From: Bigelowiella natans CCMP2755
Lineage: Eukaryota; Protista; Cercozoa
Reading direction: 5' to 3'
DNA length: 64,000 nucleotides
Assembly: GCA_000320545.1 (NCBI GenBank)
Contig: ADNK01001857.1
Coordinates: 21,707 to 85,706, forward strand
Shown here in pieces: positions 1 through 64,000 of this stretch (the stretch's first letter is position 1; every line of letters begins with the position of its first letter). The notes under the pieces were generated by a model that saw only the letters and a program-made list of their open reading frames with translations, did no database searches and was not told the origin of the DNA. The position numbers and the translations under genes are program-made.

Positions 1-821
1 TGTTGCACAGTACTGACTACTAAGTATAGCAGAATTCTATGAATTAAAGGCGGGACTAAGTTTTCTGGTGTAAAGAGAAGATGGTGCGAGGAACCATTTC
101 TTATCAATTTCTGTGGCGAAGTCACTAAATCCATCATTTGTATGTGAACATAAGCAACAGCTCGAAAAATGCTGGTGATAAAAAATAAATTATTACTTTT
201 TTGCTGGGTAATTTTGTGCCGATTTCCTAGTTATCGAAGAAGTGGCAGGACCAGGATCGCGTCCATAAATGGTCATGATTCTTTGGGAAAGTACCATAAG
301 ACCCTTGTCGGGGGTATATGGCCTGGCTAGACTCTTGGCGCGTTGAAGCAACCCCGAATCTTGCATCTTGCTCACAGGAAACTTTAGTCTCATCTTGATG
401 ATCGCACGAAAGACACTTCGTGTTACTTCAGTACCTTCTGAAGTTTTGATCCATTGGTAGAGAATTTCCAATCCCTTACATTCTGCGAAGCTAAAAACAA
501 TTCGGCATTATCAAGTTCGGAGCAAATGAAAGGACACTTTGCCTGCATTCACCTGTTTATTGAGGACCGATCACGAGATAGCTTCGGGATTGCAGTCCTT
601 AAGATGTGCATACGTTCGGATTCGTTCTGTGATCTTTTCAGCAGGTCAACGAACTTGGGGACTCTAGAAGAATGCATTGGCGCCTTTGGGTTTGATCCGG
701 ACAATGCCTTGATTGCTGTTATTAATTCTGACTGGAAACCCCTCCGGGTGGGTGCATCTGAAAGAAGTTCTCCCGTGGGACCATGGATGAGCCCTTCATC
801 CCGACCCGGTCGATATGCCAT
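1..821 (-). CDS. TFIIS N-terminal (LW/TND)-like domain protein; 3' end probably continues toward or beyond the window start
   Basis: Exon 821-553 spliced (GT..AG) to exon 490-197 gives ...FVDLLKRSQNESERMHILRTAI...INSFAECKGLEILYQWIK...KMQDSGLLQRAKSLAR, resembling the TND helical bundle of PNUTS/IWS1/SET2-type proteins. Donor at 196; later exons unresolved. Confidence 0.5.
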
Positions 822-1275
822 CGGCAGGCAACTGCGGCGTGGAGTTCTGTCTGCTAGAACGATACGAGGCTCTAAAACCCGCCGGGACTTGATGATTTAG
901 TCCTAAATAGAGGGGAATTACATGCTACGTCATCTCACAAGAAATGCGACTACAATACAAATTCGACACTCCCAGAACGACAAGAGTTTGAAGAGAAAAA
1001 GCATATCATCACAGATAAGCAGAAATATACTGCATATTTACATGACGTACGCATAAAACCATTGCTGTTTGACGGAAAACTGAAAGAGCAACACATCGAT
1101 TTCCAGCGGGTTAAATCTTAACTGTAATCATAGCAGCCATCAGCCTCCTTCGTCGGTATGGATGGAAGGGGGAAGAATTCTTTTTCTTTTGCAGTGGATC
1201 CACATTACGAACAATAATAAAAAGTCTCACTTCGGAAGGTAGACAGGAGGAAATCAGCTTTTCAGAGTATCTGAA
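822..1275. promoter_or_regulatory. Putative bidirectional promoter and 5' UTRs (TND gene / KA1 gene)
   Basis: Divergent start codons 455 bp apart; positional inference only. Confidence 0.5.
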
Positions 1276-2379
1276 ATGGAGAGGAAGGATGAATTCACCG
1301 ATCAGGACGCGAAGGGATCCTTCATGGACTCAAATAACATTTTGGTCTTGAAGCATCACACTTCAGACCCACTTGTTTATCGTTCAGCAGGGATGCCAAG
1401 AATGAAACAACTAGTATTTTCTCAACATTCTTCTTTGGGGAGATCTTTAACACCTACAGGTGTTGGAAAAGCTGAGGATCCTAGGATGATATTCACTCCA
1501 GCCTCGTCATCTTCTTCTGTTCCTCCTCTTCCGGAGGAAGTTAATGGAAAAACACTTATTCATTTCGATGCTCTACCAGCAAATGTTATCATGAAGAAAC
1601 TTCGAAGGGAGCTCGATAAACTAGATTGTGAGTATTCCTCGGCAAAAAATAAGGTGTGTATCTTTAAGATTACTCTACTAGTGTCCGTGCCGTGACTAAG
1701 TCTGTTCTTCTTCCAATTGAAAACTTAGATTGAAGGCAAGATAATCCAAGGTACCGAATTGTACCAATTTTGTGCCAGCCTTTATACCCTGGACCCCAAG
1801 GAAGGCGGAAAAGTGAGACGCTTGGGTTTAGATATGCAGCTCCTTCAAGGCGAGAGAACTCCTTGGTTCAGATTTCTCGCAAGGCTTACCGAGGTTCTTG
1901 AGGGGAAAATTGATCACGATGTACGCGAATTTGTGGAAGGATACTTTGATCTCCCTGACCTCGAAAGCTTCTCAGGACAAAGTGTCGCACCTGATAGGGA
2001 ATACCTCAAGTCATGTACTGCAATGGTAGAGTCATGTTTTTTAGAAAACCAAGTGAGCGGGCTGAAGGGGATCAAGGAAATATTAGACATCTGTTCTAGA
2101 GGAGATATTCTGGCAATGAATCTAGCATTACCAGTTATTGAGACAATAACTAAGGCATTAGAGTCCAAGGACTTGACGGTTTTCCGTGTTGCTTCTGACC
2201 TTCTCTCCAGGGTTTTAATTTTACATCAAGACGATGCCAAAATCTGCGATCCACTTCAAGCAGTATTTAAAAAAATGGATATTTTTATAGCTGAGCAGCA
2301 AAAGGAAGGATTTGAGCTTCGATACATTAAGAAGAAAATAAGACAATGTCGTTCACTGTTGAAACTAGATGAATCATAG
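1276..2379 (+). CDS. Protein with a KA1-like domain followed by a helical (ARM/HEAT-like) region; no kinase domain
   Basis: Exons 1276-1653 and 1729-2379 join in frame across a GT-AG intron. ANVIMKKLRRELDKLDCEY...YQFCASLYTL...LDMQLLQGERTPWFRFLARL resembles the KA1 pattern (family call from pattern memory). Confidence 0.6.
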
Positions 2380-2419
2380 AAAATAATAGAAATGATAAAC
2401 TTTTAACCATGCCGTGATT

Positions 2420-3200
2420 ATTCCAGAAGCTTCATGTGTGACGCAATGTACGCGTAACCTCTTGTGTGAGCGTGAACACATGTCACGACGGAACAGCATC
2501 ATCAAACATGAATAATTCATTGCAACATGCGTTACCACAGCCAGAGCTGACATGTCAACCGTCATGGTAGGCAGGCTATTATGAGGCGCATTGTTGTTCA
2601 TATGTGCCTACTACTCTAGTACTGCGGGCATCAACATGTGTAGATCTGTTCCTAATTGCTAGATTGCTGCTGTGTGCATCTATGACTCTAGGATTTGTTA
2701 GACAGATTGTTGTCAGCACACGAGCTATAGCTAGTGACATGGAAAATTACATTCAGCTATTGAGCTTGTGCTAGCTATATAGCTAGGCACATGTGTGTGG
2801 CTCGATCGCCGCGCCTGCTCGCACATTTGCGATTGCTGGATGTAAGCTTGCATCTTGTGTGCTTGTGCGTGGCTGCTATTTATTGGATGTGCCTCGTGCT
2901 TGTTCACATGCACCACATCATGATTGCACTTCATGAGCTCGCTTGTGCTGCGCGTGAGTGTCGTACTAGCTTGTGCATGTGTCATCGTGTCACGTCGATC
3001 GTGTGATGTCCCATAATGACGTGTGGCACGGATGCACATGTGGGTTGTGCACACGGTCCTACGCCATGCACGTGCTGGCGGTCACCATGCAGACACATGA
3101 ATAGACACAAGAGCGCACAGATTAGAGATTGCGAAAAGATTCGTTGTACTGTCTGCTGAGTGTGTGGTGCGGCATGCAAAACACGAGATTCTTTTGTTGA
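2420..3200. other. RY-alternating, palindrome-rich intergenic block (convergent junction)
   Basis: Dense CATG, TGCA, AGCT, CTAG and CACGTG-like words with few homopolymer runs, between the KA1 (+) and GAR1 (-) 3' ends. Confidence 0.7.
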
Positions 3201-3326
3201 TCATTGTTGCCGAGAAGATGCGATGTTCTCCGAACCTACATCTGCTCGCTTCTCAAGCTGCTCTTTGATGCACAAAATGTTTCAAAACTGCTTTTGTGTT
3301 GCATGTTTTTGAAAATGTTGTAGTGT

Positions 3327-4247
3327 TTACCATCGACGTCCCCTTCCTCTACCACCCCCCCCTCTTCCCCTTCCACGACCTCCACCTCTGCCTCCCCTTC
3401 CTCGTCCACCTCCCCTTCCCCCTCGTCCACCACGGCCACGGCCACCTCGGCCACCTCGTCCACCTCGACCTCGGCCACCTCGACCTCGGCCACGTCCGCC
3501 AGATTTTTTAGGATTTGTGAATCGCGACATTGGGAGCAGTTTCATTGGATCGATAAAGAATGAATTTTTCTGTATGGAAATGTGCTATCAGCAACAGCAA
3601 AATTTTTTGTTTTTATGAAAAGTTGTTTCTCCTCACCTCTTCGAACGAGTTTGAATTTATTCCAGGATCCAACTTTACCGTAAAAAAAGTCTCGTTGATG
3701 GGACCCAAAACCTAGATAAATATCACGGCTCAGCAGATTGAAACATAATATGTGGAAGCGATAGCAATATATCAGTGTGCACAGATGGTTGACCTCTTCA
3801 ATTTTTCCTATTTTTTGCTTATTTTGGAGATATATTGGAGCGTTGAAATATGGGATCTGATGAAAGTAAATGAGTAACCGCTTTGATCCACTCTTTTTTC
3901 CAATCTAAAATTTCGTACCTTCTCGTTTGTAAGCTTACAAAGCATCTCAGACTCGCATGGGTGGATGAAGGTTCCAACTTCTATTAATATACCAAAAAAA
4001 ATGCAAGCAACATTGACCCACCATAGTAATTGAGTAGGTGCGCTTATACTTTCTTTTGCGTGTTTGTGTTCATGTGTTTTCGTGTGTGTGTGTGTGTGTG
4101 TGTGTGTATGTTTGTGTGCGTTGTCTCACCGACTACAGTCGCGGGGGGTCCTGCATCGTAACCTCTGCCCCTGCCCCTTCCTCTTCCTCCTCTACCCCTG
4201 CCTCTCCCTCTTCCTCGCGGACTTCTTCCGCCTCTGTTGAATCCCAT
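3327..4247 (-). CDS. GAR1: H/ACA snoRNP subunit GAR1
   Basis: Five phase-consistent exons: 4247-4130, 3980-3919, 3856-3794, 3711-3637, 3569-3327. RGG-rich ends flank the core [56 protein letters not shown]...FFIDPMKLLPMSRF. Confidence 0.97.
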
Positions 4248-4790
4248 TAGATGGATGTGTTCGGTGCGACGTCTTATTACTGAGTAGGATTGCCCCCCCC
4301 TGTTCTTGATTAGGCACCTGAGCTTGTTCGCTTGCTTGTATGTAGCTCCGTGGCAATTTCCCGTAATGGCTTGAGTTTATCATCTGCGACAAGTGAAAAC
4401 ATACCCCTTCTTTTCATATTCGAGTCTTACATTTTCTTGGCTCTTCAGTTGCATCATTTTAGTGTTGCGAGATTGTTTTGTCTGGTCTAGATCTAATGTC
4501 TTAAAAATCCAAAAACGAAAGTCAAATGTGATTTTTTTCACAACTGTACATGTAGTATTCTACCCCTAAAATAAAATCTGAAAATCAGAAGCTCAAGCAG
4601 CCACAAAGGGGAAAAAAAAAGTAACAAATTAAATTCAACGATGGTTAAAATCTCGATGATTTATTTGAAGTAATCGCATATTTGAATGATATGTCTTATT
4701 ATTAGATGTACTGAACAAATCTATTGAAAATACCCACCAGAATTCAACCGCAAGGAGGAAGCGAAGCGTAGGAAGAGGACCTACCTCATT
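4248..4790. promoter_or_regulatory. Putative bidirectional promoter and 5' UTRs (GAR1 / PITH)
   Basis: Divergent start codons 544 bp apart; positional inference only. Confidence 0.55.
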
Positions 4791-4962
4791 ATGGCGGTAA
4801 CTAGAGACAGTAACTACCCAATATTAGTACGGACACAGTAATTTTCTCCCTATCTTCTCTTTAGGATTTAACGAAGTACGTGGACGCAGCTAAAGTCACA
4901 GCCCTAAACTACGGTGACACCTATGGAGAAGCTTAGAATTGGAAAGAAGAACATACAAAATA

Positions 4963-5007
<45 letters not shown>

Positions 5008-5008
5008 A

Positions 5009-5047
<39 letters not shown>

Positions 5048-5706
5048 AATATTACATACATATGTAATGTGACATTGTCCAGATAAATCCACAAAGCCGG
5101 AAAGTATATTTGGAGGGCAGGGACTTATCAAGAGTGATACAGATGAGCAACTACTCATAGTAGTTCCATTCACTGAGGTCTCCACTCTAATAAGTTGGCG
5201 TTTGCCAAATAACTCAGAATACTTACTCACCAGTGATATGTATTCTTTATAGGAGGTGAAAATTCGTCATATATCATTTTCTGCAGAGGGAAAGGAGGGT
5301 AATCAAAATATTTTTGGAATTAATAAATATCCATAATCTCTTTACACCACTCATTCAGGTATTGACTCGGCACCAAAGATAGTTAAAATCTTTAAAAATG
5401 CCGAAAGTATGGAATTTGAAGAGGCGGAAGATACAGAACCAACTGCACAGCTTGACCTTTCCGCTGACGACTTGAAAAATGCCGAGAAGCTCAAACTTAA
5501 ATTCACGAAATTTCAAGACGTTAATTCTATCACGATTTTCGTAGAATCCAATCAAGGTGATGAGGACGTGTCATTCTTGAGCAACGTGACATTCTATGGG
5601 CAGTCGAAGCCAGGTATATAGAAGGCTGGGGTTATTGTTTGTTTCTAAAAACTGAGGGGCGTGCTTTTTAGGAACTAATATGAAGGAGTTAAAGAAAGCT
5701 GGATGA
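4791..5706 (+). CDS. PITH-domain protein (PITHD1/TXNL1-C type)
   Basis: Exons 4791-4796, 4865-4913, 5083-5177, 5253-5298, 5359-5613, 5672-5706. Motifs KSDTDEQLLIVVPF, APKIVKIF, LKFTKFQDVNSITIFVESNQG, GTNMKELKK. Confidence 0.92.
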
Positions 5707-6509: not shown

Positions 6510-7997
6510 TCATGTCTGCCTTAATGGTTGAACTAAAGTGTAAGATGCATCTCGCTGGGGCAATGATGATGACGAGGAGGAGCCTGTGTTGTACAGTACG
6601 TCGTCAAACATAGGTCCAGATGGTGAATCGATTACTGATGTTGAGAGAGCAATCGGAATTCTTCGTAAAGAAACTCCATCTTCGTTGCTATCATTATTTT
6701 TTGTTGGTGGACCGAAGATGAGGTGTGGACGTTCACGCCGGTAGAACGAGTAATTCTTCCCATTAGCGAAAGGTACATTGATGCGTGGATATGCACAACC
6801 CCCGAGATCCTCTGGCGGTAGCAATGGCGCAACTCTCCACGTTCCTGCTAATCCCGATCTTGAATAGTAATGACGCCCACAGTCTCCAGATGCATTGGTT
6901 TTATAGTGAGCACCACGATCTCCGTTATGAGATAGAATATGATATATACCCCTACACATTAAAAAAATATTGTGCGCATTTTAATGATTTTTTGCGATTT
7001 TTTCTTGTTAGATACGTAAGTTTGCGATTTTAAGGCAGAATAGATGTGAGTTGATTTCATTAAACCTGGAATCGATCCACATGCTTGGATCTTCTCCTTC
7101 CCAAGGGGTCGGAGGATCAGTATTGAAATCAGGCGCTTGCCCAATGTCCTCGTACTTAATTGGATCTCTCCAATCATCTGACCGCCATATATCCCACCTC
7201 GTCCATGCCAGAAGAGTTCCATTAGGCAGTATCACTGGAGCGAGATTGAGGTCGATCTGAGGACTTAGCCGTGGATGATTAGCTTGCTCACATGTCCCGT
7301 TTCCAAACCCTGAAACCTGGGTCGCACAGAGCGATTGAAGCGGTGACCAAGGTCCGTAGGGACTCTTTGATGTCGTAAAATAGCTGAACATTGTCTTGTT
7401 TACGCCACAGCCGCACTCGACGTTGCATGATGATCCACCGCTAGCTGAAGTACCATCTGAGCATGTGCAAGTTGGACAGTCAGCCACGGATCCATTTGGA
7501 TAGAAGGTCACAAACAAAGCAAGTGTCCCATCCGGAGCTTCTGTAACTATGGGTTCGTGCGAGAATATTGGCAATACAGGATCTCCAACTTTTTCAAAGC
7601 GCCAATCATCCTTCTCTCCTTTGGAGACAGCATGTACAACGAAAGAATTCGTCGTCCACCGATGGATACCACAGCTTTGTGATATTTCTGAGGCAAACAT
7701 GTGATACATGCCTGTTTCATTTTTGTAAATCACTGAGCCTCCCCATGTACTCGTCGGCTTTCCATTGGGAGGTCGATGGAGGAGATTAAAACCCGATCCA
7801 TTTGAGGCAGGAAGGAGATCAAGCTGATGGCAGTATACACCCGTCCATCCGGTGAAACAATCGCATCCCCCATCCGTACAAGCCCCGTTGAAGGAACAGT
7901 CTTCGTCCTTCCGACAAGAAGGGGATGACAAAGACAATGGTAGTGCCGTTATCATCCAAATCCCAAGCAAATGCACAGGCCCTGGAAACAGTAGCAT
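6510..7997 (-). CDS. Secreted protein: signal peptide, EGF-like domain, GH43/GH32-like five-bladed beta-propeller
   Basis: Exons 7997-7066 and 6951-6510. Hydrophobic N-terminus; EGF motif CSFNGACTDGGCDCFTGWTGVYC; propeller motifs TWGGSVI, YHMFASE, SHEP, EDPSMWIDSRGIYHILSH, RRERPHLIF. Confidence 0.75.
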
Positions 7998-8473
7998 TCG
8001 ATGCTCCTCGATTCAGTAGTAGTAAGTTGCAGTAGGTCAGATATGATAGATAGATGCCGGGTCGTTGCTCGTACGAGGGGTTGTTTGTTTCTAGATGGTG
8101 GTTGGGGTTGATGATGGTAATACGAAATGATCAATGATAATCATGATAATGATGTCGCACAAACAAAATCCAATGCATTTCGTGTTGTTTCAGTAAGGGA
8201 TATGTCGCACGATAAGTATTGCCTACATTTAATGGTTTATTCCTGCTTAACAGGAGAGCGCAACATCATCATCGGATGTTTTAAGAACAACAACTACTCA
8301 GTAATAATTAATATGCCCTACCCACGCTACTGCTGCTGTACGAGTAGCAGTAGTAGACAGATAGCTGCTGCTGCTATGTGGTGGTGGTGGTAGTGGTGGT
8401 GGTAGTGGTGGTAGTGTGGTGGTGGAACATCCGCACTTGAGTCCTGCTCTCTACGAAAGGAGGAAGAAAGAGA

Positions 8474-10262
8474 ATGGGTGAAGAACCAGAAGTAAGGGGA
8501 AAGCGCATACTCTCCGATCCCACCGCTCTGGTTTCTCACATCATGCAGCAGCAGCGTGGTGATACTACTGCTACTGCTGGATCAGATCATCATAATAATA
8601 ATACACGCAGATGCAGCATCGACGGATACTTTCACACGCCAACGCTGAGGCCACGAAGGCACGGGGGATTTGACGGAAGGATTTTGACGACTCCTATCCT
8701 AGAAGGGGGGACTTCGAGAAGAACCTCTCTGTCCTCCCTCACAGACTATTTCGATCTCAGAACCTCAAATTTAGACTTAGGAGAACCTTCAGGAAGAAGA
8801 GAAGGGGGGGGGGGCTCCCTTCTTCATCAGTCAAAATCCGAGGAAGAACTCACCTACGGGAACAGCAGAGGACACAAACCAACTACGGCTGATCTTAAAG
8901 CCTCGAATGTTCGAGCAGTCTTTGCCATCATGTGTATAGGTGCTGATCAAGAGACTTTTTTGGAAACATATTACGCATTGAACATAGAAGTAGTAGTAGT
9001 GGTGGTGGTGGTGATGGTGGTAGTAGGGTAACAGCATATACGATGATGCCCACTACAAATCTTATTGCAATTAATGCTTTCATGCTGCAGGTTTTACTGT
9101 AGAATTCTTCTGGGCCGTTGGAGAGGTTGACAGGCTATTTGTTTGTGCATGATTGAATGTGATTTCTTATTTGAGAAATCATGTGTCGTCAACATCGTTG
9201 TCTCTCTCCTCACAGGTGGTAATAATGCCCTTACTGGAGTTGCAGGGAGCAAGCTTGTCTGGTATATATCATCAAGCAGCTGAAATATTAGAAACATTCA
9301 AAACTACTACTATATTAATAATGATGATGCTAACAACACATGACAACGACAAAAATGGTGTATCCATCCATCCTGTAAAGGGAATAATAACGTCTCCATT
9401 TTCCTGATGATATTCGCTCGGGATCCTTTGTTGAACGCATCATCACTGCCTTGATCGCCGTAGTCATGAGGATAGCGAGAGATGTCGTATTGCATGATGA
9501 TCATGATGAAAACTGATATCATCATCCTTCTTTATTTTGCTGCTGTTAGTCAGCCAATTCTCTTCAATTCATGTCATCGTCGTCACAGCCATTTCATCAC
9601 ATTTCAATTATTATAAACAGAGGCATCTGGCGTGATGTTACTGTGTCCGGTGTTGACTCTTATACTACACCCCCTAATCGGATCATGGTACGTTGTATAC
9701 TGTTTTATGATTATCATGTGTTTCATAATGGTGGTGCTGGTGGTGGTGCCGACGATGGTCTCACATAATGCCCTCCCCCTCCCTCTCTATAGGTCTGATA
9801 GAATGGGAAGGAAAATTCCAATGGTTACAGCTGCTCTCTTTGGTAGTTGTTATGAAGTCTGAGAGATATTAATGCCTAGGTTCCTTCTCTCTTGTATTCT
9901 TCATACATATTGTTGTGTCCTCCTTCCTACCTTCCTTCCTTCCTTCTCATGAAGATGATGATGATGATAATGATGATGATGATGTGTGGAAAACAACAGG
10001 CAGCTTGTCCCTATTCTGCCTCCTGTTTCAAGATACACTTTTCTCATCAAGCTACAGTAATAGTCATTCTTTCTCTCAACAGAAGTTCTAGTAGTAGTAG
10101 ACAATTTCATCATTCTTTCTCTCAACAGAAGTTCTAGTAGTAGTAGACAATTTCATCATTCTTTCTCTCAACAGAAGTTCTAGTAGTAGTAGACAATTTC
10201 ATCGAGTAGTGGTGCGCTTGGATTGTTTCCCCCCTACTGAACGTCGTGGTGGTGGTGGTGTT

Positions 10263-10297
<35 letters not shown>

Positions 10298-11680
10298 CAC
10301 AATTGATTAATTATTCGTTGAATGATCATCAGGCTACTATTTCACAATCATTGCTTATGGAGTGTCTGAGACGGTTGTTTGCTATACTAGTGTAGTAATT
10401 AGTAGTAGTAGTAGTAACTATTGAGAGCGAAACGACGACAGGATGAATGTAGTACAACTACTTCTCTCAAGAGTTATTAGTTTACGATGATCTCATGATG
10501 TATCGTACGTGATTTTGCCGCTGCTTCTTGCTTGCAGAAGTAATATTTGCAGTGTGTCATTATCATGAATATCATCTAATCATCTATTTTTAATACTACC
10601 ATTATTGTAGGCACACGATCTGCTTTACACTCTTGGACGAGCACTAACACATGACCATGCCGCTGACCTTGAAGGGGGGCTACAACAAATTACCAGTGAA
10701 TTCTCAGCGGTTATGAAGTGCGGACGGTTGTTAGGTGATGATAAGGCGACTAAACATAAATGATATTATGTAAGCTTAATCGGATTTTGATGGAAATATT
10801 ATCCGGGCAAATTATATGTACAGTTATAATATATGTATACATATTTATATTTCTGATCTGTTACCCAAACCTCGCTGCTCCTTCCTCTTGTCATAACTTT
10901 GCTGCTGCTAATCGAGTAGGATTTTTGATAAGCGTTTTTCATGTTGAAGCTATTCTGCTACAATGGAACAAAGATGACGATCATGATCATGATACTGAGC
11001 AACGAGTTATACCAGCAAACTTAGAGCAACTTGGCTGCGGGGATCAATTAGATGATAATCTGTAATTATCCACATACACGTCGTTCACTTTCTTTTTCTT
11101 CCTATTCTTCTTTTTGTGACGATTTCCTCCACCTCACTTCTACTCTCTTTCTATTACAGAATCGATACAGCCCTTCATTCAAAGATTCTCTTCGGTGTCG
11201 TGTTTTTCTTTTGGTAAGAATATAGCTGTTTGGATAGATGCAAGATGATACTGTACATTGTTAGGTTGTTCCTGTATATTGACTAATTGGGTTGCCTGTA
11301 ATCGTTGTTCAATGATGCAATTCTTATGATGCTTGTTATCGTTGTTCTCCTCCTCCTCCTCCTACTCCTCCTCCTCATCATCATCGTCATCATCGTCATC
11401 ATCATCATCATCATCATCATATCATGAACAAATGTTGCTAAAATCAGGACTGCTTCCACAATAGGAGTGATGTTGTTTGTCACCGACAAAAAGCAGCACC
11501 AACAACAACAACCTGAGAAGTTAAAAGAAATACGGAACGTATGCGATGATGATAATAGTAATGTTGGCGATGATAATCATCATCATCGTCATCAGCATCA
11601 TCATTCTCATCATCATCATCATCAACAACAACAACAACAACATCCCTCTGCAGCTTTGGATAGTATCAATAACCACATTC

Positions 11681-11726
<46 letters not shown>

Positions 11727-11877
11727 GCGTCCACATGATAGTAAGAGGACAACGAGGAAGAACAGAAATATTAATGATGATGATGATAATGATGATGAGG
11801 ATGATAAGAGGAGGAGGACCAACTATGGAGCACTTTCTTCTTCTTCTTGTTGTTCCGATAATAAATCACCACCTTCG

Positions 11878-52785: not shown

Positions 52786-52822
<37 letters not shown>

Positions 52823-52906
52823 TAAATCCGTAGATGATGATGATGAGGAGGAGGAGGACAGGGAAAAACTCAGTCCGTCAGTTAGTCAACAGCAGCAGTA
52901 CACACA

Positions 52907-52943
<37 letters not shown>

Positions 52944-53127
52944 CCTTCCTTCCTTTTAGACTGCAGCAGGGCACACATACATGCCGTTTGGTTGCATTTG
53001 ATTTACAACATCTGCAGTTGTCCCAACCATTACTATCATGGTTCTCGTTCGGTACTCTATATTATTGAGCATATCTCCCCACTACCATCATCCTATTCAC
53101 TCTCCATTGGAGGTAGGTAATCATCAC

Positions 53128-53161
<34 letters not shown>

Positions 53162-54078
53162 GTCGTCATTCTACCGTTGGATTGCTAGGAACAGTTTCAC
53201 GGAATATGTTTGCCTATTTTTGAGCACATGATCTCGCAGCTTCTCTGCGTCTCCTGTAAATAGGTTCATCATCGTTATCATCAACATCATTATTATAACA
53301 ACTTCTCATCCTTGTCGTAGTAGTAGAAACCATTAATGCCTTCCCGTATTGGCGCATGATGTACTGTGTTACTTCTTCTTCCTCTTCATCATCATCTTCT
53401 TCTTTTTCTATATACTTATCAATGTTCATTCGCAAATCGTTCGGCACATAATAAATCATCATCATCATCATAATTATCCTCATAATAATCATTTTTCATC
53501 ATCAATGTTTTTGAATATGATCTTGATGATGATGATACAACCAAGACTTTGAAGGTGTCCAGCGACGTAGATATACCGCAGGTCAACCTAGTAACAACGT
53601 AAGAATAATAATAATAAGAATAGTAATACTGCATCATATTCCATCACACGCCTAAAACACCATAAACCCCCACTATACCAATACCAACCCCCCTCCCCCC
53701 CCTCCTTTAGTTTCAGCAAAGCTAGTTTGTTCAGCACGGATGTGGTGTTGAGCTATCCGACCGACCATTTTGACGTCATTAGCAATCAGGATGTTTTCGA
53801 GTGCCAAGGGAATATCAGGAACACCGCATGCTAATTAACAACGAGCAAACCAAGGTTACGACAACGATAAAAATACAGAACAACGAATAATACAAAGGCA
53901 GCATCCAATGACGATCAGGTTGATCCAAATTGGAATAATCACAAAGCTCTTCTAACTCTTCTTCTCCATTCTGATTCTTCTCCAGTAGAAGTAGTAGTTG
54001 TTGTTGTGCTTCTTCTTCTTCTTATCGTATTCTTTTCTTCGTCTTTCTTTCTTGTGATGGAATTCTTCTTCTGCTATG

Positions 54079-54126
<48 letters not shown>

Positions 54127-56031
54127 CTCTTTCTCTTACCTGCTTTCACCAACGCCCATGCCAAAGCTGGAGATTTGCTCGGAATTGTGCTCTCTTTTCA
54201 CAGTAGTAGTAGCACGCAGCAATAACAGCAATAGCAACAACAAAGAATGGGATGAGGGTGATGAAATACTGCTGCATGATAATGACGATAATGCGTGCTA
54301 TCAATTTTCTGCTATGCTCTTTGCTGTGCTTCATTGAATGTTTAGAAGCTGCGAAGCTGCTACTCCCTATTTCTCTGATTCTCTTCTTTTGTTTTGTCTT
54401 TATGTTGGGAACACACCAATTTCTTCACTGATTTTGCGCAGTTGCTTCTTCCAAGAACTTATATGGAATGCCTCCCACAGCAACAGAATGTATGTATTTT
54501 CGTTCTTTTCAATCCCCTTTAACATGCAAGCAAGGAAGAACAACATTATTGTATAAATATGTTACAGGCAGCAGAGGGACAGGAACGATGTGCATTACTG
54601 CTCCACCGAGAACCCACATCATCACTATTTGCATTGTGTGTGCCAGCGTAAATTTACCTGTGCGCTCATATCTGTGATTAGCTGTACTGCTTCTCCATGC
54701 TCTGCGAACGCTGATGATCAAAGACGATGCAGCAGCAACAACAGCACAACAACAGCCCGTTCAGAGAGAATCGACGCCAAGAAAAAGATGATGATGGTGA
54801 TTATAACATGTGCTCTTAAATGTGTGTGGAGAAGAAAGCAACAAGAAGTACAAGAGTAACGGTTTGTTTCAGATGGTAAGTACAAGTACCACTAAAATGT
54901 TGAAGAGGAGGTTGCATTGCTGTGTGCTGGGATGGAAACCATCTCTTTGTAGGGCTTTGAAGATCTCCTTCGCCATCTGCTTGTTGTGCGCAATTATTCA
55001 AACTTTTAACAACATTTGGGTTGTTGCTGTTGTAACAACCCCCACCTAACTACTTATCGCCATCATTATTATTATTATTATCATCATCATCATTATCAGC
55101 AGCAGCATCTTAGTTTGATTAATGAAACAATACTATCATGGTGTCGTTGTTTTTGTGATCACGCAACAATAAATTAGCGTTGTGTCAATATGTATTATTT
55201 CAATCATCACTGCCATCAAATCTACAAAACCCCCAATGATTCACCACGCACATGAGCTCATTAACCTCCACATTCTTGTGTCTAAGAGCTATCTTGAGGA
55301 GCGACGTAAACAAATCAAACTGCAGGACATTCCCTGTAGTAGCATAGGTATTCTTATTGCCATTGATGGTATGAAATATTATTCATCATGATGATGATGA
55401 TGATGATGATGGCTTTGTCTAGAAAATTTATTTATATGATGATTGATGTGGGAGGAGGAGAATGGGGAGGGGGGGGGGGGGGGGGCGATGGAAATGAATT
55501 GGACATAATTGCATGTGTTTCTTTGTCGTGAGATAGTAGGTAGGTATGTAAGGAGCAGTAATGTTCTGCTTATGATTCTTGTTGTTGTTGTTGTTCTTCT
55601 TCTTCTTCTTCTTCTTACCGGATCCATGCGTACTTTCTATTCCTTCCATGACCTAATAACCAAATAACCATTTCTAGTTGTGTGAGTAATATGTTGATGA
55701 TAATGATGATGATGATGATGATGATGATGATTAACGGTTATAGAAGTAGTAAGTAGTAGCAGTAGCAGGCATGCGTGTGGAAGCTACACACAACAACAAC
55801 AACAACAACCTGGTCCCAGTGAGAGTTTTGGGCTAGCATGATGAGGATCTTATCAACAGAAACCGTATCTATCACCCCCATCCTATTTTGCAGTAGTAGT
55901 AGTGGTAGTAGTAGTAGTAGCAGCAGCACAACAAACAACAAGAACAAGAACAAGAACAAGAACAAGAACAAGAAAAGGCAACCGAGAGGGGGCGTGTGAG
56001 TGAGGATGAATTCTGATATAATATACAATAA

Positions 56032-56097
<66 letters not shown>

Positions 56098-56998
56098 AAG
56101 GGGGGGGATTCTATTTCTTAAGGAAGAAGAAATAGAATTTAATAATAATAAATAATGATGATGATGATGATGATCTTCCAGCGAGAGGATGAAATTTTTG
56201 ATAAGGATGATCATTAAGAACAGGCTGCTTATGTGTGCTACTGCTACTAACATATGCTGACAGAATGTATTTGCTTCATAGCATCGATGATACACTTATT
56301 ATTACTTCTGCCTCCTCCTCGTATTGCTAGTAATAGAGCTCCTACTACTACTACTACTACTACTACTACTCTACCGATTTGTACCTATGCATTGCGATAC
56401 GAATCTCGGAAGCCACAAGCCATGTTCTGAGGCGATAGAAGGAAGAGAAGATATATGGTGGGGGGAGAAGAAGATGGACAACAACAACAACAAACAGCAT
56501 TAAAACAACATCAAATGACAAAATAGCACAAATGGCACCCCCGTGAAAGGCTTGGAAAGAAGAGGTCGTAACAATAAGGATGATGATAACGTTCATCATA
56601 GTCAACGAATGTCGATGAGGGGGTTCATGACGACAGCCACAGTGTTCTCATCATCAATCCAGAAGAACTACTAGTAGTACTGCTAGTAGTAGTGAATCAT
56701 CCTTATGGCATTAGTGTAGTCGTGGTTGAGTGATGAGCTACCCTTTGTCTGCTGTAAACATTTTCAGTTGCTCTCTCAGTACATCGGGACGAGGCTTGGG
56801 ATGATCATTTCCTGACGATGCGGTGGTAGTATTATTATACAAAAGAACACTCATGTCAGCAGCAGCTATCTCCCACAGTCATTATAAACATTTTGTACAC
56901 ACCAAACACACACACACACACACACATGCATGCATGCATGCATGCATACGTATTGTATATGTAGTATATATAAATTTATATATATATATATATACATA

Positions 56999-57038
<40 letters not shown>

Positions 57039-57071
57039 AATTATCCTTTTATATATTTCTCTCTCTCTCTG

Positions 57072-57156
<85 letters not shown>

Positions 57157-57390
57157 TTGTTTTATGAGCACGGATACTATTTCGTCGTTATCTTGTACAA
57201 CAAACAACAACGTTGTTTATATTATTACCCGCTAAAACGTACGTCCACATACACTTGAGATATGCGCTGTAGATCTGGCCTGGAGGAAGGTGAGACATCA
57301 TCATAATCGATATAATTGCACAGATTGTCACGATGAACTGTATTAACTTTGATTTTAGGTGAACGATGTTGTTTTACGAGAAACAACAAC

Positions 57391-57424
<34 letters not shown>

Positions 57425-57615
57425 CCATTCTCAATGTCGGTATTCCTGTTGTACACTAGAAACTGTAGAAGTGCGGATACATCATCTAGAACAACAACAA
57501 CAACAACAACAACAAATGGGAGGAAAGAGTAAATGTGTCATGAGATATCTCGAAGAGAGACGGGTGGAGTGGAGGTAAAGGGGGGTAAATTACACGTGAT
57601 ACTCCTTGTAGATTG

Positions 57616-57654
<39 letters not shown>

Positions 57655-57776
57655 CGCTAATTACCTTCTGTTTTAAGTATACGTGACTTAACAGTGGCAT
57701 CAAGGCTTTTGCAATTTGTGGCTAGCACTTCCTCAGCAACCTGAGCGAAATAGTAATAAACGGTTGTCGTTGTTGC

Positions 57777-57810
<34 letters not shown>

Positions 57811-58169
57811 AGTTGCGTTTTAGGTGATTGATTGCAGAAAGTGCTAGTGTCCTATCAGTCTTCTCCTCGTTCAATATGTCAAGATACGGCAATGGAGCAC
57901 TATCATTGGTACCGCTTTCGCCGTTGGATGTTTCTCTTCCATTTCCTTCAATTTTGATTGGGTGAAGCTCTCTATGTCGAACGTGGGCCCAAAGACACTT
58001 TTCGAGACGACCTTTATTCGTGTGATGATGATGATGATGCTCAGTGCACTCAATCATGAGAACTGGAAGAAGAATGAGAAGAAAGAGAAGATGATGGAGA
58101 GAATTACTTTGAGTATGTTCCTGTTATTGCGTCGGATATCTTGAGTCGCACTAGCTTTAACTGAAGCAT
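45395..58169 (-). CDS. Large multi-exon gene, probably a degenerate PPR (alpha-solenoid) protein; boundaries uncertain, may be more than one gene
   Basis: Many small minus-strand GT-AG exons between microsatellites. PPR-like segments MAKEIFKALQRDGFHPSTQQCNLLFNIL (54976-54893), IKAYRRLREIM..QKENEIPFNSCYDCLAR, VDKILIMLAQNSHWDQ. Confidence 0.5.
48975..49040. repeat. 22-bp minisatellite, 3 exact copies
   Basis: TTCTAACCATCTTACATCATTA at 48975, 48997 and 49019. Confidence 0.95.
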
Positions 58170-58659
58170 TGGCAGAGGCTTTGCAAAGGCTTCTACGGAG
58201 CAAAGATCGCCCAAGCGCCGTTGAGTTGCTGCGATAAGGTATGCGTCAGCTCGTGTCCAATGCAATTTTCGAGTACAAATCAGTGTAAGAAATGGGAAAG
58301 AAGATATGCAAAGAAAGGAGCACCTCATCAGAGCCCTCCTCATCACGCTCATCACGGGTATGGTTTGAGAGGTGAGGGCAAGTGTCATCGGAAGTCCGAA
58401 GGGAATCGTGTAAAAGGGTGCGATTAAATCACTGCGACAACATTTATGGTGCAAATCCCTATCAAAACCCATTGTCTTCTATGGATTTGATGCAATTGTT
58501 GATATTCTTCGGATCACATTTTGTCTAGCGGGAAAGAGAAGCACGCCCCCCCTCTCCCCCTCTCTCCTTTTCTACTACGCCTGCAACACAGACAAGATAA
58601 GCCACCACGTCAACACGTAAGGAACTTTCGAGGAGGGATTAAGAACACCATTATTAAAC
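58170..58659. promoter_or_regulatory. Putative bidirectional promoter (PPR-like / HBS1)
   Basis: Divergent start codons about 490 bp apart; the PPR-like start is uncertain. Confidence 0.45.
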
Positions 58660-61020
58660 ATGTCACGGCATCGCGGTATGAAAGCGATGCTGGACGACTA
58701 CGAGGACGACAGATACAGGGACGATGAAGGTTCATACATCTCCACCTTTCATACCATACTCCTCTGCCATGCATGGAAACCATACTCGGTGAGCTATGGC
58801 GGAAGGTGTCGTGCTAAATTTTATTAAATTTTTAGATGACTATTGGGAGGAGGAGGATCAAGCCAACGATACAGAGTACCTCTATGAGCGCCCTCCGTCA
58901 GGTGCTTGTTGGACATTCACGAGATGAGACTGCGAGGCATGCACAGACCGCCTTCCGGAAATGATTTTCTTAACATCTGTTTGTTAGGCCAATATGATTT
59001 ACCGCCTGCAAAAGGGATCACGAATTCCAAATCTGTAGCGGCAGGGCTCGATGGTCTAAAGCGCCTCTCTCTGCAGCCTAAGCTTAACGACGAAGTCATT
59101 GCACAATTCACCGTCGATGGCCAGGTATCTTAACAACAACTTTCCTTGAATGGAATTTTCAATAACTGAGCTCACAGGCAACATTTGAGGAAGGTTTCAT
59201 GTGTGGGGTTTCCTTCTTCTTCTATCTTTCTTTTGCTGTTATTCGGTTAGTGGTATCCAGCAACAGTCACAGCAGTGACACCTCTCGGAGACGGGCACTC
59301 ACTTTTCCGAGTGATGTATACCGGGTTAGTTTTCTCGATTCTAAGGAAATTTCTATGCTTATGAAGATGTAAGAGAAGGCATCACAGCGGGAGAACTCTC
59401 CTCCTGATGCTTCTTCTTGATGGCATTACTTCTTGACACATGTTCTAAATTATAAAGCTATGGAAATGAGGAAGAGTTGACCTTGGACCAATTGAGGCTA
59501 CCAAAGGCAAAGCAAGAAGGTAATTCTATAATTATTATTATTATTATAATATTATTATTGCATTGTGGATAATGACCTCTCAGCTAATCTTCACTGAATT
59601 CCACGCACGCAATCTTTATTTACCAGTTTCTGCTATGAATATACCTTGATCATCATCATTTATACGGCGACTAATTCTTCGCACTACTCTTTATTTCACC
59701 ATCATCAACTTTTGATGATATTCCAAAAACAACTGAAGATGAATTAAAGACGCTAGATCTCTCCAAAGGTAGTACAGAAGAAGTGCAGAGGGAATTGGAC
59801 AAAACAGATCTAATACACAAGGGAGGGTATGAGAGGCTTCTACAACAAGCACAGTATTTACTACGTATATATCAAGAAGCTGCTTATATATTATTAGTTT
59901 TATGAAATTTGGTTCTTTTGCTTGCCTTGTTTCTCCTCCTCCTTTTCTCCTCCTCCTCCTCTTCTCTTCTTCCACTGCTCTCAGGAATTCGCCGGACATC
60001 ACAAGTAAGGCTCAAGCTGAAAGTTCCAGTAAGTATTAATAAGTTGAAAACTAGATGATTAGCAACGATAGATAATACCAAAATGGTAAACCAGCGAGAT
60101 ATCCAGGAAAGAAGGATACATATACAATATATTCATAAATAGCAATACTACCAGTAGTGGTATTAGTACTGGTGGTCATCAATTTAATATATGCTGCTAT
60201 TGACTACAACACATTTAGCAAAGTAATTTCTCCAAATCTCGATCATTCCCGAAGAACCTCGGTGTCAGCAGCAGCAGCAGCAAGCAAACAAAAAATATGG
60301 GCAGTGGTAAGAAGAATGTCAGTAACAAGATTTCAGACTTCAAATCCAGGGTAAAACCTTCCTTCTCCTCCTCCTCCTCCTCCTCCTTATCCAACACATA
60401 AGCCAAAACTGGCAATAAATTGCAACAACCAGTACTTGCTTCTCGTTCGGAGTGGCAATGTATTTTGATGATCATCATCATCACATCATCATCATCACAT
60501 CATCATCATCATCATCATCATCATAAGCAGTAACTCGTATCGTCATGATGATTCTATTGTTGAGAGACCAGGTGGTACCGGTACTACGTCTTTTCAGTTT
60601 GAACATGAATCATTATGAACTATCATGCAGTACGTATTCTCACCTGTTTGCTTACATTTTTGAAATGATACAGCAGCGCAGGGATAATGGAGATTGTAAG
60701 AGCGCACAGCAACCACCTAAATTGAAGAAGAATTATTCAAATTCCAAAGCAAATTCGTACATCCCAAGGTCTCTAATGAACCATTTCTCTTCCTCCTCTT
60801 CATCCTAACCCATCACTTTGTTATCTGCCGTTTGGTGCAAGGCTTGGCCTCTTCCTTCTTCTTCTTCTTTGTCTTTTTTTTTCTTCCCTTCATCATTCTC
60901 ACATTAGTAATGATGATTCACATTTCTTCTTCGATGACCTGTTGTGATGATCATCATATCTATATAGTAAGAAGCATGAAGCAGAAAGGGCTAGACTCCT
61001 CAGCGAGAGGTAGTAGTAGC

Positions 61021-61055
<35 letters not shown>

Positions 61056-61654
61056 AGCCCTTTGATAGATACTACTATCAACCACCCCATCCCATCATCA
61101 ATATCCATCAAAATCTGCATTATTAAATACGTAGGCTTCTTCCGTATTGTTATAGAAGTGCAATCGAGATAGATATTCAAATATTGCTTTCTGACCCCCC
61201 CCCCCCCCTTATACGTTATACACAGGTGTGGTGGATCCGAGCCAGCTGCATCTTCTTCCTCGTCATCATCCTCATCCTCGTCGTCCTCGTCTCCACATAA
61301 GATGAATTTAGTAGTGATTGGGCATGTAGATGCTGGTAAATCTACGCTCATGGGACACCTACTTGTGAAGCTTGGAAGAGTAATACTAATAGTATAATAC
61401 ACATTGAGAAAAAGTGCATTCACAGTAGCAGCCCGAATATCGGTCAACGACAAGTATTATATTCGTCGCAAACGCCCATATTATATATTATATATACACA
61501 TATTACATTTGTAATGTGACATTATAAGGAAACAAACTTATGGATATTTTCCATCATGACGACGATGGTGATGATGATGATGACCTCTTGAACGTTTCGC
61601 TTGAAAGCACTTGTTTCTCATCTCCTGACCGAGCACTTTGCTACTACTACTAAT

Positions 61655-61691
<37 letters not shown>

Positions 61692-62238
61692 ATGGTACTT
61701 AATTAGGTTGATCAACGTACCATGCGTAAGTACAAGAAGGAGTCTGCTCAGATGGGAAAAGGGTCATTTTCCTTTGCTTGGGTACTTGATGGTCATCAGG
61801 AGGAGAGGGAACGAGGCATCACGGTAATAAAAAACCATTATCATCATCATCAACAACAACAACAGCATCATCATCATCATCACCATCATCGTCGCCTCGA
61901 TAGACCATATATTCTTATTCTTCTTCTTCTCCCTCCCTTCTTCCACCTTATAATCTCATGATGGTAGGTGGATGTAGCGACAACTCATTTCAGCACCAAG
62001 AATCGTGAAGTCACCCTTTTGGACGCTCCAGGCCATCGGTAATATATGTCTTAATAATAATAATAATATTAGTAATAATAATAATAAATATCAGTATTCT
62101 TTCGTGATGATGACGATGGTGGTGGTGGTGATGATGATGATGATGATGTATTTAGTTTGATTTTCTGGTGCTGATTCCTCATCCATTATGATCCTTGGTA
62201 ACCTTGTTTTTTATTCTCTCCTTGTGGTCATTACCATA

Positions 62239-62273
<35 letters not shown>

Positions 62274-63428
62274 TCATCATCATCTAGGGACTTCATCCCG
62301 AATATGATATCTGGTGCGGCGCAAGCTGATGCTGCTATATTAGTGGTAATATTAATAATCTTCTTCTCCTTCTGCAGCAACATTACCGGCGGTATTTACG
62401 ATGATGCATTAAGGTTGAATTATATTGTCAATCACACATAATCAGGTTCCTGCAAAAATTGGAGAGTTTGAGACCTCATTTGCCAAAGGTATTAGTATTA
62501 TTCAGTCGTAGTAAATCAATCCAGATTTAGGCCATCAATGACGACAGTCTGCTCAGAACAACAACTACCTTCACTGTATTCGTCATGTTTTGGAATTAGT
62601 TTGATGATGATGTGTGTATACTGCATTATTGACTGATTGACAAATGAATGAATGCATAAATGGATATAGGGGGGCAGACCAAGGAGCATGCAACCCTTAT
62701 CCGCAGCTTCGGTGTCAAGCAGATTGTTGTCGCGGTTAGTAATATAACCACAATGAATAATAATGATAATAATAAAAATACACAATACTTAATAAACACT
62801 TGCACATCATGATCATTGTGATGATCATCCTCATCCTCCTCCTCCTCCTCCTCATCATCATCATCATCATTCTTGTTGATTTCTACAGATTAACAAAATG
62901 GATCTGGTCGGTTGGTCTAAGGCGAGATATGATGAGGTGCAATAATATCCACATATGATCACGATGTACGTACCTACTACCTCATTGCCGTCATTATCGT
63001 CATCATCGTCATCATCGTCATCATCATCATCATGATCATCATCATCACACAACCATCATCAGGTATCGAAGACCGTAGTAGGTTTCTTGCGATCATTGGG
63101 ATATAAATCAAAGCAGATTACTCTCGTTCCTGTTAGGTAATACAGAAGATAGATAGTAAAAAACAACAACAAGATGAACCAGAATAAGCAGCAGCAATCC
63201 TGCTCACTTAACGTGTCATGACCGGTAACGGTGATGAAGAAGATGATGATGATAATGATGATGATGATGATTTGTATTGTTATTTGTATTAGCGGTCTAT
63301 CGGGAGAGAACCTGACTGAGGCAAAGAGTGTAGATTTGACACATTGGTACAAAGGCAAGTCTCTTGCAGAAGCAATCGATAATGTAAGAAGAAGAACAAC
63401 AACAACAACAATAACCTAACACTTAAAA

Positions 63429-63466
<38 letters not shown>

Positions 63467-63639
63467 ACAGCGACCGCCTGTTCTGAGCTACAATTACCGC
63501 CCATGCTTATTATTTTCTTCTTCATCATCATCATTATCATCCATTTCGATCTTTACTATCACCATATATCCAATAATAAACACGATAATGATGATTGTTC
63601 GCCGTCATCCCATTCTGCCCATCTTCGTGTTGATTCTTA

Positions 63640-63680
<41 letters not shown>

Positions 63681-64000
63681 TCAGATTCCCGCACCTCTAC
63701 GCAACGGTGAAGGCGATTTGTGCATGGTTGTGAGCGACATTTACAAAGCTCAGACCTCCGGCGCCCTTATGGTAGTATTAGTAGCAGCAGCAGTAGTAGT
63801 AGTAGTAGTAGTAGTAGTGACAAAGTAAAGTGTGTTTTTTTTTGTTTCTATCGTTACAATGCCTCTTTTTCTATAGATTGCTGGCAAGCTTGAGCGTGGA
63901 TCCGTCATCCCAAAGGATAAGGTGAGAGACGATGATGATGATGATAGTCATGATGATTGCTTGTTTAAGAAGAACAAGTAGAATGGGGATAGATGGTCAT
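58660..64000 (+). CDS. HBS1: HBS1-like translational GTPase with an N-terminal Tudor domain; 3' end beyond window
   Basis: Start MSRHR plus acidic DDYEDD stretch typical of HBS1. G-domain exons [42 protein letters not shown]|[11 protein letters not shown]|[35 protein letters not shown]. Confidence 0.93.

What the first reader, a model, noticed from the sequence alone, without database searches (positions are those of the whole stretch)
1..64000. Genome built from head-to-head gene pairs with near-perfect strand alternation
Seen: the 17 gene models run -,+,-,+,-,+,-,+,+,-,+,-,+,-,+,-,+, so 15 of 16 neighbours switch strand. Under random orientation P(>=15 of 16) = 17/65536, about 2.6e-4. Divergent ATG-to-ATG distances cluster tightly: 455, 544, 477, 611, 415, 430 and about 490 bp. 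Inference: the basic transcription unit is one compact bidirectional promoter driving two functionally unrelated genes. I do not know whether this has been described for this lineage.
Basis: partly seen in the sequence, partly recalled or inferred. Interest (0 to 1): 0.8.

Follow-up and report, generated by a model that had tools for sequence, protein, structure and literature searches.

The report
Alga genes alternate strands, head-to-head
In this stretch of the alga Bigelowiella natans almost every resolvable neighbouring gene pair faces opposite ways, so genes sit back-to-back on very short shared upstream spacers; the pattern is real and much stronger than in other eukaryotes I could find described, but the exact count of 15 of 16 is not proven.

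Summary
The window is nuclear DNA of Bigelowiella natans: a protein encoded here is JGI Bigna1 model 76986. The core observation holds. Ten of the eleven neighbour pairs I could resolve switch strand. The one exception is CK2-beta followed by the SNAP-25-like gene.

Strands rest on Pfam or PDB matches, on RNA contigs spliced on the minus strand from 46.5 to 51.9 kb, and on a validated strand-restricted coding score. Three ATG-to-ATG gaps (477, 430, 415 bp) check out.

"15 of 16" is not verified. About 18.5 kb inside three long reader models (12.3-19.8, 28.4-33.1 and 52.4-57.2 kb) stays unresolved. The official model covers only 4 kb of the 12.8-kb "gene".

On two other contigs nine of nine resolved pairs also switch. 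Three Pfam-checked apparent same-strand pairs each hid an opposite-strand gene (L36, LSM weakly, E2 acyltransferase); two more were judged by eye.

Divergent spacers carry the word TGTCGCA, often as a dyad, CGACA-N12-13-TGTCG. That dyad occurs 1605 times genome-wide against 238 for a control pattern. Shared regulation of the paired genes is untested.

This scan has already flagged the same pattern on other DNA of this genome: 43 notes and one follow-up (s1-716018). I found no published description.

The parts
1..507 (-). g1, 5' end of a minus-strand gene that continues left of the window
   Evidence: Strand-restricted score 1.3 (+) against 17.5 (-) over -1700..520. ORF 196-507. No Pfam match.
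876..2379 (+). g2, unnamed protein gene
   Evidence: ORFs 1243-1692 and 1729-2376. Score 48.1 (+) against 11.4 (-). No Pfam or PDB match.
2295..3394 (.). Palindrome-rich (CTAG/TGCA/CATG) tract in the tail-to-tail gap between g2 and g3
   Evidence: up to 21 such words per 400 bp; TA observed/expected falls to about 0.36 in its 3' part (2801-3400).
3239..4400 (-). g3, GAR1-type H/ACA snoRNP protein with RGG tracts
   Evidence: Pfam Gar1, E = 3e-6, on 3545-3904. Score 2.5 against 18.9.
4800..5621 (+). g4, PITH-domain protein
   Evidence: Pfam PITH, E = 2e-23. Score 27.8 against 6.2. TGTCGCA at 4385 in the spacer.
6513..7997 (-). g5, EGF-bearing secreted-type protein
   Evidence: 329-aa ATG ORF 7008-7997 with EGF_Teneurin, E = 2e-5. 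Score 5.2 against 51.6.
7998..8473 (.). Divergent spacer g5/g6, 477 bp from ATG to ATG, with two TGTCGCA words (8153, 8203)
8474..12105 (+). g6. The first exon is solid; the 3' part is low-complexity and unverified
   Evidence: 185-aa ATG ORF 8474-9031, coding score 22. The strand test is indecisive.
12300..19960 (.). Only its right end looks like a minus 5' exon
   Evidence: No strand call and no Pfam match. CTAG-rich tract at 15.1-16.2 kb. Dyad at 14252.
19934..20420 (.). Spacer upstream of CK2-beta, with the dyad CGACA-N13-TGTCG at 19995
20421..21254 (+). g8, casein kinase II beta, two exons
   Evidence: Pfam CK_II_beta, E = 4e-55. Exons located.
21100..22400 (.). TA-depleted, palindrome-rich tract filling the only head-to-tail gap; TGTCGCA at 22400 at its end
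   Evidence: TA observed/expected 0.05-0.34. No coding call on either strand.
   Evidence: Score 24.6 (+) against 7.4 (-). No Pfam or PDB match on single exons.
25000..28400 (-). g10, MFS transporter
   Evidence: Pfam MFS_1, E = 0.002. Score 2.2 against 31.0. MFS-like exons at 27738-27887 and 27931-28104.
28400..33100 (.). Unresolved stretch with the dyad at 29102-29124 and a palindrome-rich tract at 31.6-32.0 kb
   Evidence: Strand scores tie at 13.5 against 13.4.
   Evidence: ORF 33142-33549, coding score 17. The strand test is indecisive. No Pfam match.
35300..36349 (-). g12, small gene, weakly supported
   Evidence: Score 1.3 against 8.5. No homologue. TGTCGCA at 36443 in the 415-bp spacer.
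36764..39098 (+). g13, Myb plus DnaJ protein
   Evidence: Pfam Myb, E = 1e-6, and DnaJ, E = 8e-10. Score 33.4 against 8.7.
40304..42166 (-). g14, probable nucleotide-sugar/TPT-type transporter
   Evidence: Three minus ORFs of at least 100 codons. Score 3.6 against 12.7. All ten best Atlas hits are NST/TPT families at 0.88-0.90. No Pfam or PDB match.
42167..42595 (.). Divergent spacer g14/g15, 430 bp from ATG to ATG
42596..44674 (+). g15, CYP97-like cytochrome P450, single exon
   Evidence: Pfam p450, E = 1e-70. Official model P0001 maps to 42851-44671.
45395..52400 (-). g16, orphan intron-rich gene. JGI model 76986 covers 46465-50537
   Evidence: RNA contigs with minus-strand introns at 46.5-51.9 kb. 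Model mapping. Whether 45.4-46.4 kb belongs to it is inferred from the lack of room for a separate gene.
52401..57200 (.).
   Evidence: Weak minus lean only, 0 against 6.2. No Pfam match. The tract signal at 56.6-57.2 kb is probably a (GCAT)n/(CA)n artefact.
57200..58170 (-). Minus-strand 5' exons facing the HBS1-like gene
   Evidence: Score 1.6 against 19.5. TGTCGCA at 58433 in the spacer.
58660..64000 (+). g17, HBS1/eEF1A-family GTPase gene, runs off the contig end
   Evidence: PDB eEF1A and HBS1 matches, E = 4e-11, on 61707-61826. Score 12.5 against 2.8 for 61-64 kb.

Best explanation
The window shows a real property of the Bigelowiella natans nuclear genome. Genes are laid out mostly as head-to-head pairs. 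Two genes point away from a short spacer (ATG to ATG about 0.4-0.6 kb here, up to about 0.9 kb elsewhere), and pairs meet tail-to-tail across gaps that hold palindrome-rich, insertion-scarred or TA-depleted DNA.

The divergent spacers carry the word TGTCGCA. It often appears as an inverted pair 12-13 bp apart, a dyad of the kind a dimeric DNA-binding protein would recognise. A site that reads the same on both strands suits a promoter region that starts transcription both ways.

Shown: the strand layout, the short spacers, and the enrichment and placement of the word.

Inferred: that the spacer is one shared promoter, and that the layout persists because head-to-tail neighbours would put a promoter next to the mutation- and insertion-prone DNA behind a gene end and in the path of read-through transcription.
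For: Organism.

Window: 10 of 11 resolved neighbours switch strand. The spacers of resolved pairs (415-477 bp divergent, 724-1209 bp convergent) leave no room for a hidden gene.

Density check: published figures of 21,708 genes, mean gene length 2,834 bp and 32.9 Mb of intergenic DNA (PMC12730881) give about 4.3 kb per gene.

Outside the window: on contig C2913 the order is DJ-1(-)/YlmH(+), then DCC1(-), LSM(+), L1(-), L36(+), LRR(-), an ORF(+), CLU(-). On C3581 it is E2(+)/ORF(-) and ORF(+)/CK2-beta-2(-). That is nine of nine pairs switching.

Prediction test: three apparent same-strand pairs each hid an opposite-strand gene that Pfam then matched (L36, E = 4e-18; LSM, weakly, E = 0.004 and below its cut-off; 2-oxoacid_dh, E = 4e-5). 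Two more looked the same by eye only.

Motif: 7 of the 13 TGTCGCA words in the window lie in about 4 kb of upstream spacers. The dyad occurs 1605 times in the genome against 238 for the control pattern. Eight or nine of the 11 copies in my 206 kb sit between diverging coding segments.

Relative: an annotated Amorphochlora locus reads + - + - - with a 543-bp divergent gap.
Against: - About 18.5 kb of the window (12.3-19.8, 28.4-33.1 and 52.4-57.2 kb) is unresolved and could hide head-to-tail pairs.
- With Pfam, PDB and RNA markers alone the window shows 6 switches, within what random orientation gives for about 15 genes. The case needs the coding-score calls.
- "Resolved" pairs were picked where I could name both genes, and I looked harder at cases that seemed to break the rule.
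- A missed small gene between two opposite genes would add a head-to-tail junction.
- My sample is 206 kb of a 91-Mb genome.
- TGTCGCA as a whole is only mildly enriched in the window (13 against 7.3 expected; 3 of 100 shuffles reach 13). One dyad lies in a tail-to-tail tract beside a retrotransposon.
- No transcription-start, chromatin or co-expression data were available.
Confidence: 0.7

Rival explanations
1. Merging artefact. The reader's "genes" are runs of same-strand coding sequence. Such runs alternate by definition, and several of them hold two or more head-to-tail genes, so the true bias is much weaker.
For: - JGI model 76986 covers only 46465-50537 of the 12.8-kb "gene".
- Three long models have no strand or unity support.
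- Gene-end-type tracts lie inside two of them.
- Tool-only markers (Pfam, PDB, RNA) give just 6 switches.
Against: - Twelve of the 17 units are under 3 kb and match single known proteins.
- Gene density argues against two genes per unit.
- RNA joins 46.5-51.9 kb on one strand at similar depth.
- Outside the window, apparent same-strand pairs resolved into alternating genes, not the reverse.
- The internal tracts come with promoter-type dyads. This fits extra convergent and divergent junctions at least as well as head-to-tail ones.
Confidence: 0.15
2. Alternation without sharing. The genes do alternate, but each spacer holds two independent, abutting one-way promoters. The layout is then a by-product of where insertions and hypermutation are tolerated (behind gene ends), not of a two-way transcription unit.
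For: - Partners are mostly unrelated in function, for example GAR1/PITH and transporter/P450.
- Tail-to-tail gaps are loaded with insertion scars and TA-depleted DNA (scan notes; the TpA hypermutation preprint).
- Single TGTCGCA words also occur singly in some spacers, for instance before the head-to-tail gene g9 at 22400.
Against: - The dyad form with fixed 12-13 bp spacing is 6.7 times commoner than its control and lies between diverging genes.
- Some spacers are too short for two full promoters: 388 bp between the DJ-1 and YlmH coding segments, and possibly about 90 bp ATG to ATG for DCC1/LSM.
- L1 and L36 share a spacer.
Confidence: 0.3
3. Regional or chance pattern. This contig happens to alternate, and the genome as a whole has ordinary orientation statistics.
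For: I could read only 206 kb. One head-to-tail pair exists in the window. The Amorphochlora locus has one in four junctions.
Against: Two other contigs show the same pattern. The scan holds 43 independent notes of alternation in this genome and a follow-up estimating about nine in ten (leads, not tests). The dyad is genome-wide.
Confidence: 0.05

Closest known systems
Bidirectional promoters / divergently paired genes of animals, plants and yeasts
   Same: Two protein genes on opposite strands with 5' ends under 1 kb apart. The partners are often unrelated in function.
   Different: They are a minority elsewhere: over 10% of human genes (PMC12672016 abstract), against about 25% of junctions expected by chance. 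Here nearly every resolvable gene has a head-to-head partner and head-to-tail neighbours are rare. The candidate element is an AT-spaced dyad, not a CpG island.
Directional gene clusters of kinetoplastids and chromerids
   Same: A genome-wide, non-random rule for gene orientation.
   Different: It is the opposite rule: long same-strand runs with rare strand switches. Here the strand switches at almost every gene.
Amorphochlora amoebiformis, the other sequenced chlorarachniophyte (DNA Res 2025, PMC12730881)
   Same: The one annotated locus I could see has 3 of 4 junctions switching and a 543-bp divergent gap, although introns there are three times longer.
   Different: This is only five genes. 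The paper's text has no mention of orientation, head-to-head or bidirectional.

Membership tests
Head-to-head (divergent) gene pairs with a bidirectional promoter | Neighbouring genes lie on opposite strands with their 5' ends facing | tested here: met
   g3/g4, g5/g6, g14/g15 and 57.2-58.2 kb/g17 in the window. DJ-1/YlmH, DCC1/LSM and L1/L36 outside it.
Head-to-head (divergent) gene pairs with a bidirectional promoter | Start sites less than about 1 kb apart | tested here: inconclusive
   ATG-to-ATG distances of 477, 430 and 415 bp meet the limit as a proxy. Transcription start sites were not mapped.
Head-to-head (divergent) gene pairs with a bidirectional promoter | One shared regulatory region acts on both genes (co-regulation, or loss of both on mutation) | not testable with these tools
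   The only evidence is an enriched dyad word in the spacers. There are no expression data for pairs.
Genome-wide orientation bias (more strand switches than the 50% expected) | The switch share is significantly above one half in an unbiased sample of adjacent genes | tested here: inconclusive
   19 of 20 resolved junctions in 206 kb switch (10 of 11 in the window, 9 of 9 outside).
Operons / polycistronic same-strand clusters | Runs of same-strand genes with short gaps | tested here: not met
   Only one same-strand junction was found, with a 1.2-kb gap.

The most novel reading that the evidence does not exclude
Bigelowiella natans, and perhaps chlorarachniophytes generally, follow a near-obligatory architectural rule. 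Almost all genes sit in head-to-head pairs on a dyad-marked two-way promoter. Head-to-tail neighbours are purged because the DNA behind gene ends is the target zone of an insertion and TpA-hypermutation system. Gene order would then evolve under a constraint not described for any other eukaryote.
Probability: 0.35. Interest if true: 0.85.

Novelty: new variant of a known kind. Interest (0 to 1): 0.7.

Why it matters
If nine in ten neighbours really alternate, this alga is a natural extreme for asking several questions: why gene orientation is usually random, how two genes share or insulate about 400 bp of promoter, and how transcription is ended between converging genes.

It also has practical uses. 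Gene finders for this genome could use the rule: it correctly predicted hidden small genes here. The short spacers and their dyad are ready-made two-way promoters for transforming chlorarachniophytes.

A whole-genome count on existing data would settle the question quickly.

Tried and rejected
- Unsupervised and seed-trained HMM gene finders of my own drifted to tiny genes and missed RNA-proven exons. I did not use them for gene models.
- The first codon score was trained on long ORFs. It was contaminated by antisense and microsatellite ORFs and was replaced by a clean seed set.
- k-mer strand asymmetry of whole gene bodies gave no usable signal in intron-rich genes.
- Pfam on about 95 ORFs gave about 25 named matches. 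The long units gave none.
- PDB searches for g2, g9 and g14 found nothing.
- The official annotation could not be reached: look-ups hide this genome, and the last homologue search, for g12, found nothing.
- A hidden minus gene in the 21.3-22.4 kb tract has no coding support.
- The tract signal at 56.6-57.2 kb is probably microsatellites.
- Palindrome tracts are not a universal mark of gene ends: 7 of 9 known junctions carry one.
Spliced models were searched exon by exon, and the joined step was left out.
Full report
**What the DNA is.** The window is intron-rich eukaryotic DNA with about 41% G+C and no tRNA or Rfam match. It is G000:C1880:21707-85706 of a 91.4-Mb assembly. A single-exon P450 has its best outside match, 44% identity, in the chlorarachniophyte Amorphochlora. 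A protein that maps to 46465-50537 on the minus strand is EukProt Bigelowiella natans P018039, which is JGI Bigna1 model 76986. The organism is therefore Bigelowiella natans.

**The main risk.** A reader without tools sees runs of same-strand coding sequence, and such runs alternate by definition. The question is whether each run is one gene. Ab initio help was poor. Exons average 159 bp and introns 184 bp (PMC12730881). Splice signals are weak, and microsatellites mimic coding sequence on both strands. My HMM gene finders failed. I therefore relied on four kinds of evidence:
- homology;
- RNA;
- a codon model trained on 8.5 kb of verified exons, which picked the true frame in 22 of 26 leave-one-out tests;
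- a strand-restricted Viterbi comparison. On 12 outside genes of known strand it was right 8 of 8 times when the margin was 10 or more, and unreliable below that.

**Strands in the window.**
- Pfam supports GAR1 (-), PITH (+), an EGF-bearing ORF (-), CK2-beta (+), MFS (-, weak), Myb plus DnaJ (+) and P450 (+).
- PDB sequences support an eEF1A/HBS1-type GTPase exon (+) at 61.7 kb.
- Contigs of three public runs splice with CT..AC ends, that is minus-strand introns, from 46.5 to 51.9 kb. One 1244-nt contig links ten exons between 47.3 and 50.6 kb.
- The strand test adds g1 (-), g2 (+), g9 (+) and 57.2-58.2 kb (-). It gives -9.1 for g14, whose best Atlas hits are all nucleotide-sugar/TPT transporters.

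**Count in the window.** Junctions with both sides resolved and no room for a hidden gene are 1/2, 2/3, 3/4, 4/5, 5/6, 9/10, 13/14, 14/15, 15/16 and 16/17. All ten switch strand. Junction 8/9 is head-to-tail. Ten of eleven gives P = 0.006.

**What is not confirmed.**
- The stretches 12.3-19.8, 28.4-33.1 and 52.4-57.2 kb gave no Pfam match and no decisive strand call.
- Two of the long units contain a CTAG/TGCA/CATG-rich tract of the kind that marks 7 of 9 known gene-end junctions here, at 15.1-16.2 and 31.6-32.0 kb. They also contain a promoter-type dyad, at 14252 and 29102.
- These marks fit extra convergent and divergent junctions, which would mean more alternation. I could not show the genes.
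- With Pfam, PDB and RNA markers alone the window shows 6 switches, within what chance gives for about 15 genes. "15 of 16" stands only with the weaker calls.

**Density argument.** Published figures are 21,708 genes, a mean gene length of 2,834 bp and 32.9 Mb of intergenic DNA. That is about 4.3 kb per gene, or about 15 genes in 64 kb. Seventeen or more alternating units therefore cannot on average hold two genes each.

- An automatic test asked which strands flank each palindrome-rich tract. It gave 11 convergent, 7 same-strand and 4 odd cases.
- I inspected five of the seven same-strand cases. Three hid an opposite-strand gene that Pfam then matched: ribosomal L36 (E = 4e-18), an LSM protein (E = 0.004, below the Pfam cut-off) and an E2 acyltransferase exon (E = 4e-5). 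The other two were judged by eye: one was a false antisense call, the other a probable small minus gene.
- On C2913 the order is DJ-1(-)/YlmH(+), and later DCC1(-), LSM(+), L1(-), L36(+), LRR(-), a strong plus ORF, CLU(-).
- On C3581, E2(+) faces a minus ORF, and a plus gene faces the second CK2-beta(-).
- That is nine of nine junctions switching. With the window the total is 19 of 20.
- This sample was chosen by what I could resolve, and I looked hardest at apparent exceptions, so the nominal P of 2e-5 is too optimistic.

**The spacers.**
- The word TGTCGCA, a lead from scan note s1-721463, occurs 13 times in the window against 7.3 expected. Seven of the 13 lie in the roughly 4 kb of upstream spacers.
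- It often forms an inverted pair, CGACA-N12-13-TGTCG. That dyad occurs 1605 times in the genome against 238 for a reversed control.
- Eight or nine of the 11 copies in my DNA lie between diverging coding segments. One lies in a tail-to-tail tract next to a retrotransposon.
- A site that reads alike on both strands fits a two-way promoter, but nothing here shows shared regulation.
- L1 and L36, both organellar ribosomal proteins, share a spacer, so partners are not always unrelated.

**Comparison with what is known.**
- I found no paper with Bigelowiella natans and "bidirectional promoter". Nothing relevant came up with "head-to-head", orientation or gene pairs.
- The Amorphochlora genome paper does not mention orientation.
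- The 2012 genome paper is not held in the library, so I cannot exclude a remark in it.
- Known bidirectional promoters serve a minority of genes.
- One annotated Amorphochlora locus reads + - + - - with a 543-bp divergent gap.

**Earlier work in this scan.** The scan has flagged the same pattern many times on other DNA of this genome: 43 notes and one follow-up estimating about nine in ten. My results agree with that estimate but rest on their own tests.

**Verdict.** The alternation is real and beyond chance, and it extends to other contigs. The exact count, the unity of three long models and the shared-promoter mechanism remain open.

Noticed in passing
window 14252, 19995, 29102; genome-wide: The dyad CGACA-N12-13-TGTCG (core TGTCGCA) occurs 1605 times in the genome against 238 for a reversed control. 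It sits mostly between diverging genes. It is a candidate binding site for a dimeric promoter factor.
   Followed up: partly
window 21100-22400: A 1.2-kb tract with TA observed/expected as low as 0.05 and up to 22 CTAG/TGCA/CATG words per 400 bp fills the only head-to-tail gap. There is no coding signal on either strand, so the hidden partner gene suggested for SNAP-25 is not supported.
   Followed up: partly
window 46465-50587: JGI model 76986 differs from the RNA contigs. It skips exon 50132-50178 and part of 49727-49877, and it ends by reading into what looks like an intron after 46520. The contigs retain a microsatellite-bearing stretch in 48019-48325. This suggests isoforms or intron retention, and the official model is probably truncated at both ends.
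   Followed up: partly
L014:7905-8645 (-) and L014:9378-9674 (+): Organelle-type ribosomal proteins L1 and L36 are divergent partners on one 0.87-kb spacer that carries the dyad. This is a functionally related head-to-head pair.
   Followed up: partly
L014:4686-5921 (-) and L014:5725-6063 (+): The DCC1-like and LSM genes may start only about 90 bp apart (ATG to ATG), with the dyad between them. The start codons are my reading, not proven.
   Followed up: no
L006:3-3324 (+): A retrotransposon ORF (reverse transcriptase plus RNase H) abuts a palindrome-rich tail-to-tail tract that also holds one dyad copy.
   Followed up: no
L018 (Amorphochlora amoebiformis, GCA_054601695.1): The orthologous-type P450 gene spans 15 kb there, against a single exon here. 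Yet the divergent gap to its neighbour is 543 bp, like the Bigelowiella spacers.
   Followed up: no
window 55400-57200: Dense (CA)n, (TA)n, (GA)n and (GCAT)n microsatellites yield long spurious ORFs on both strands and a false palindrome-tract signal.
   Followed up: partly
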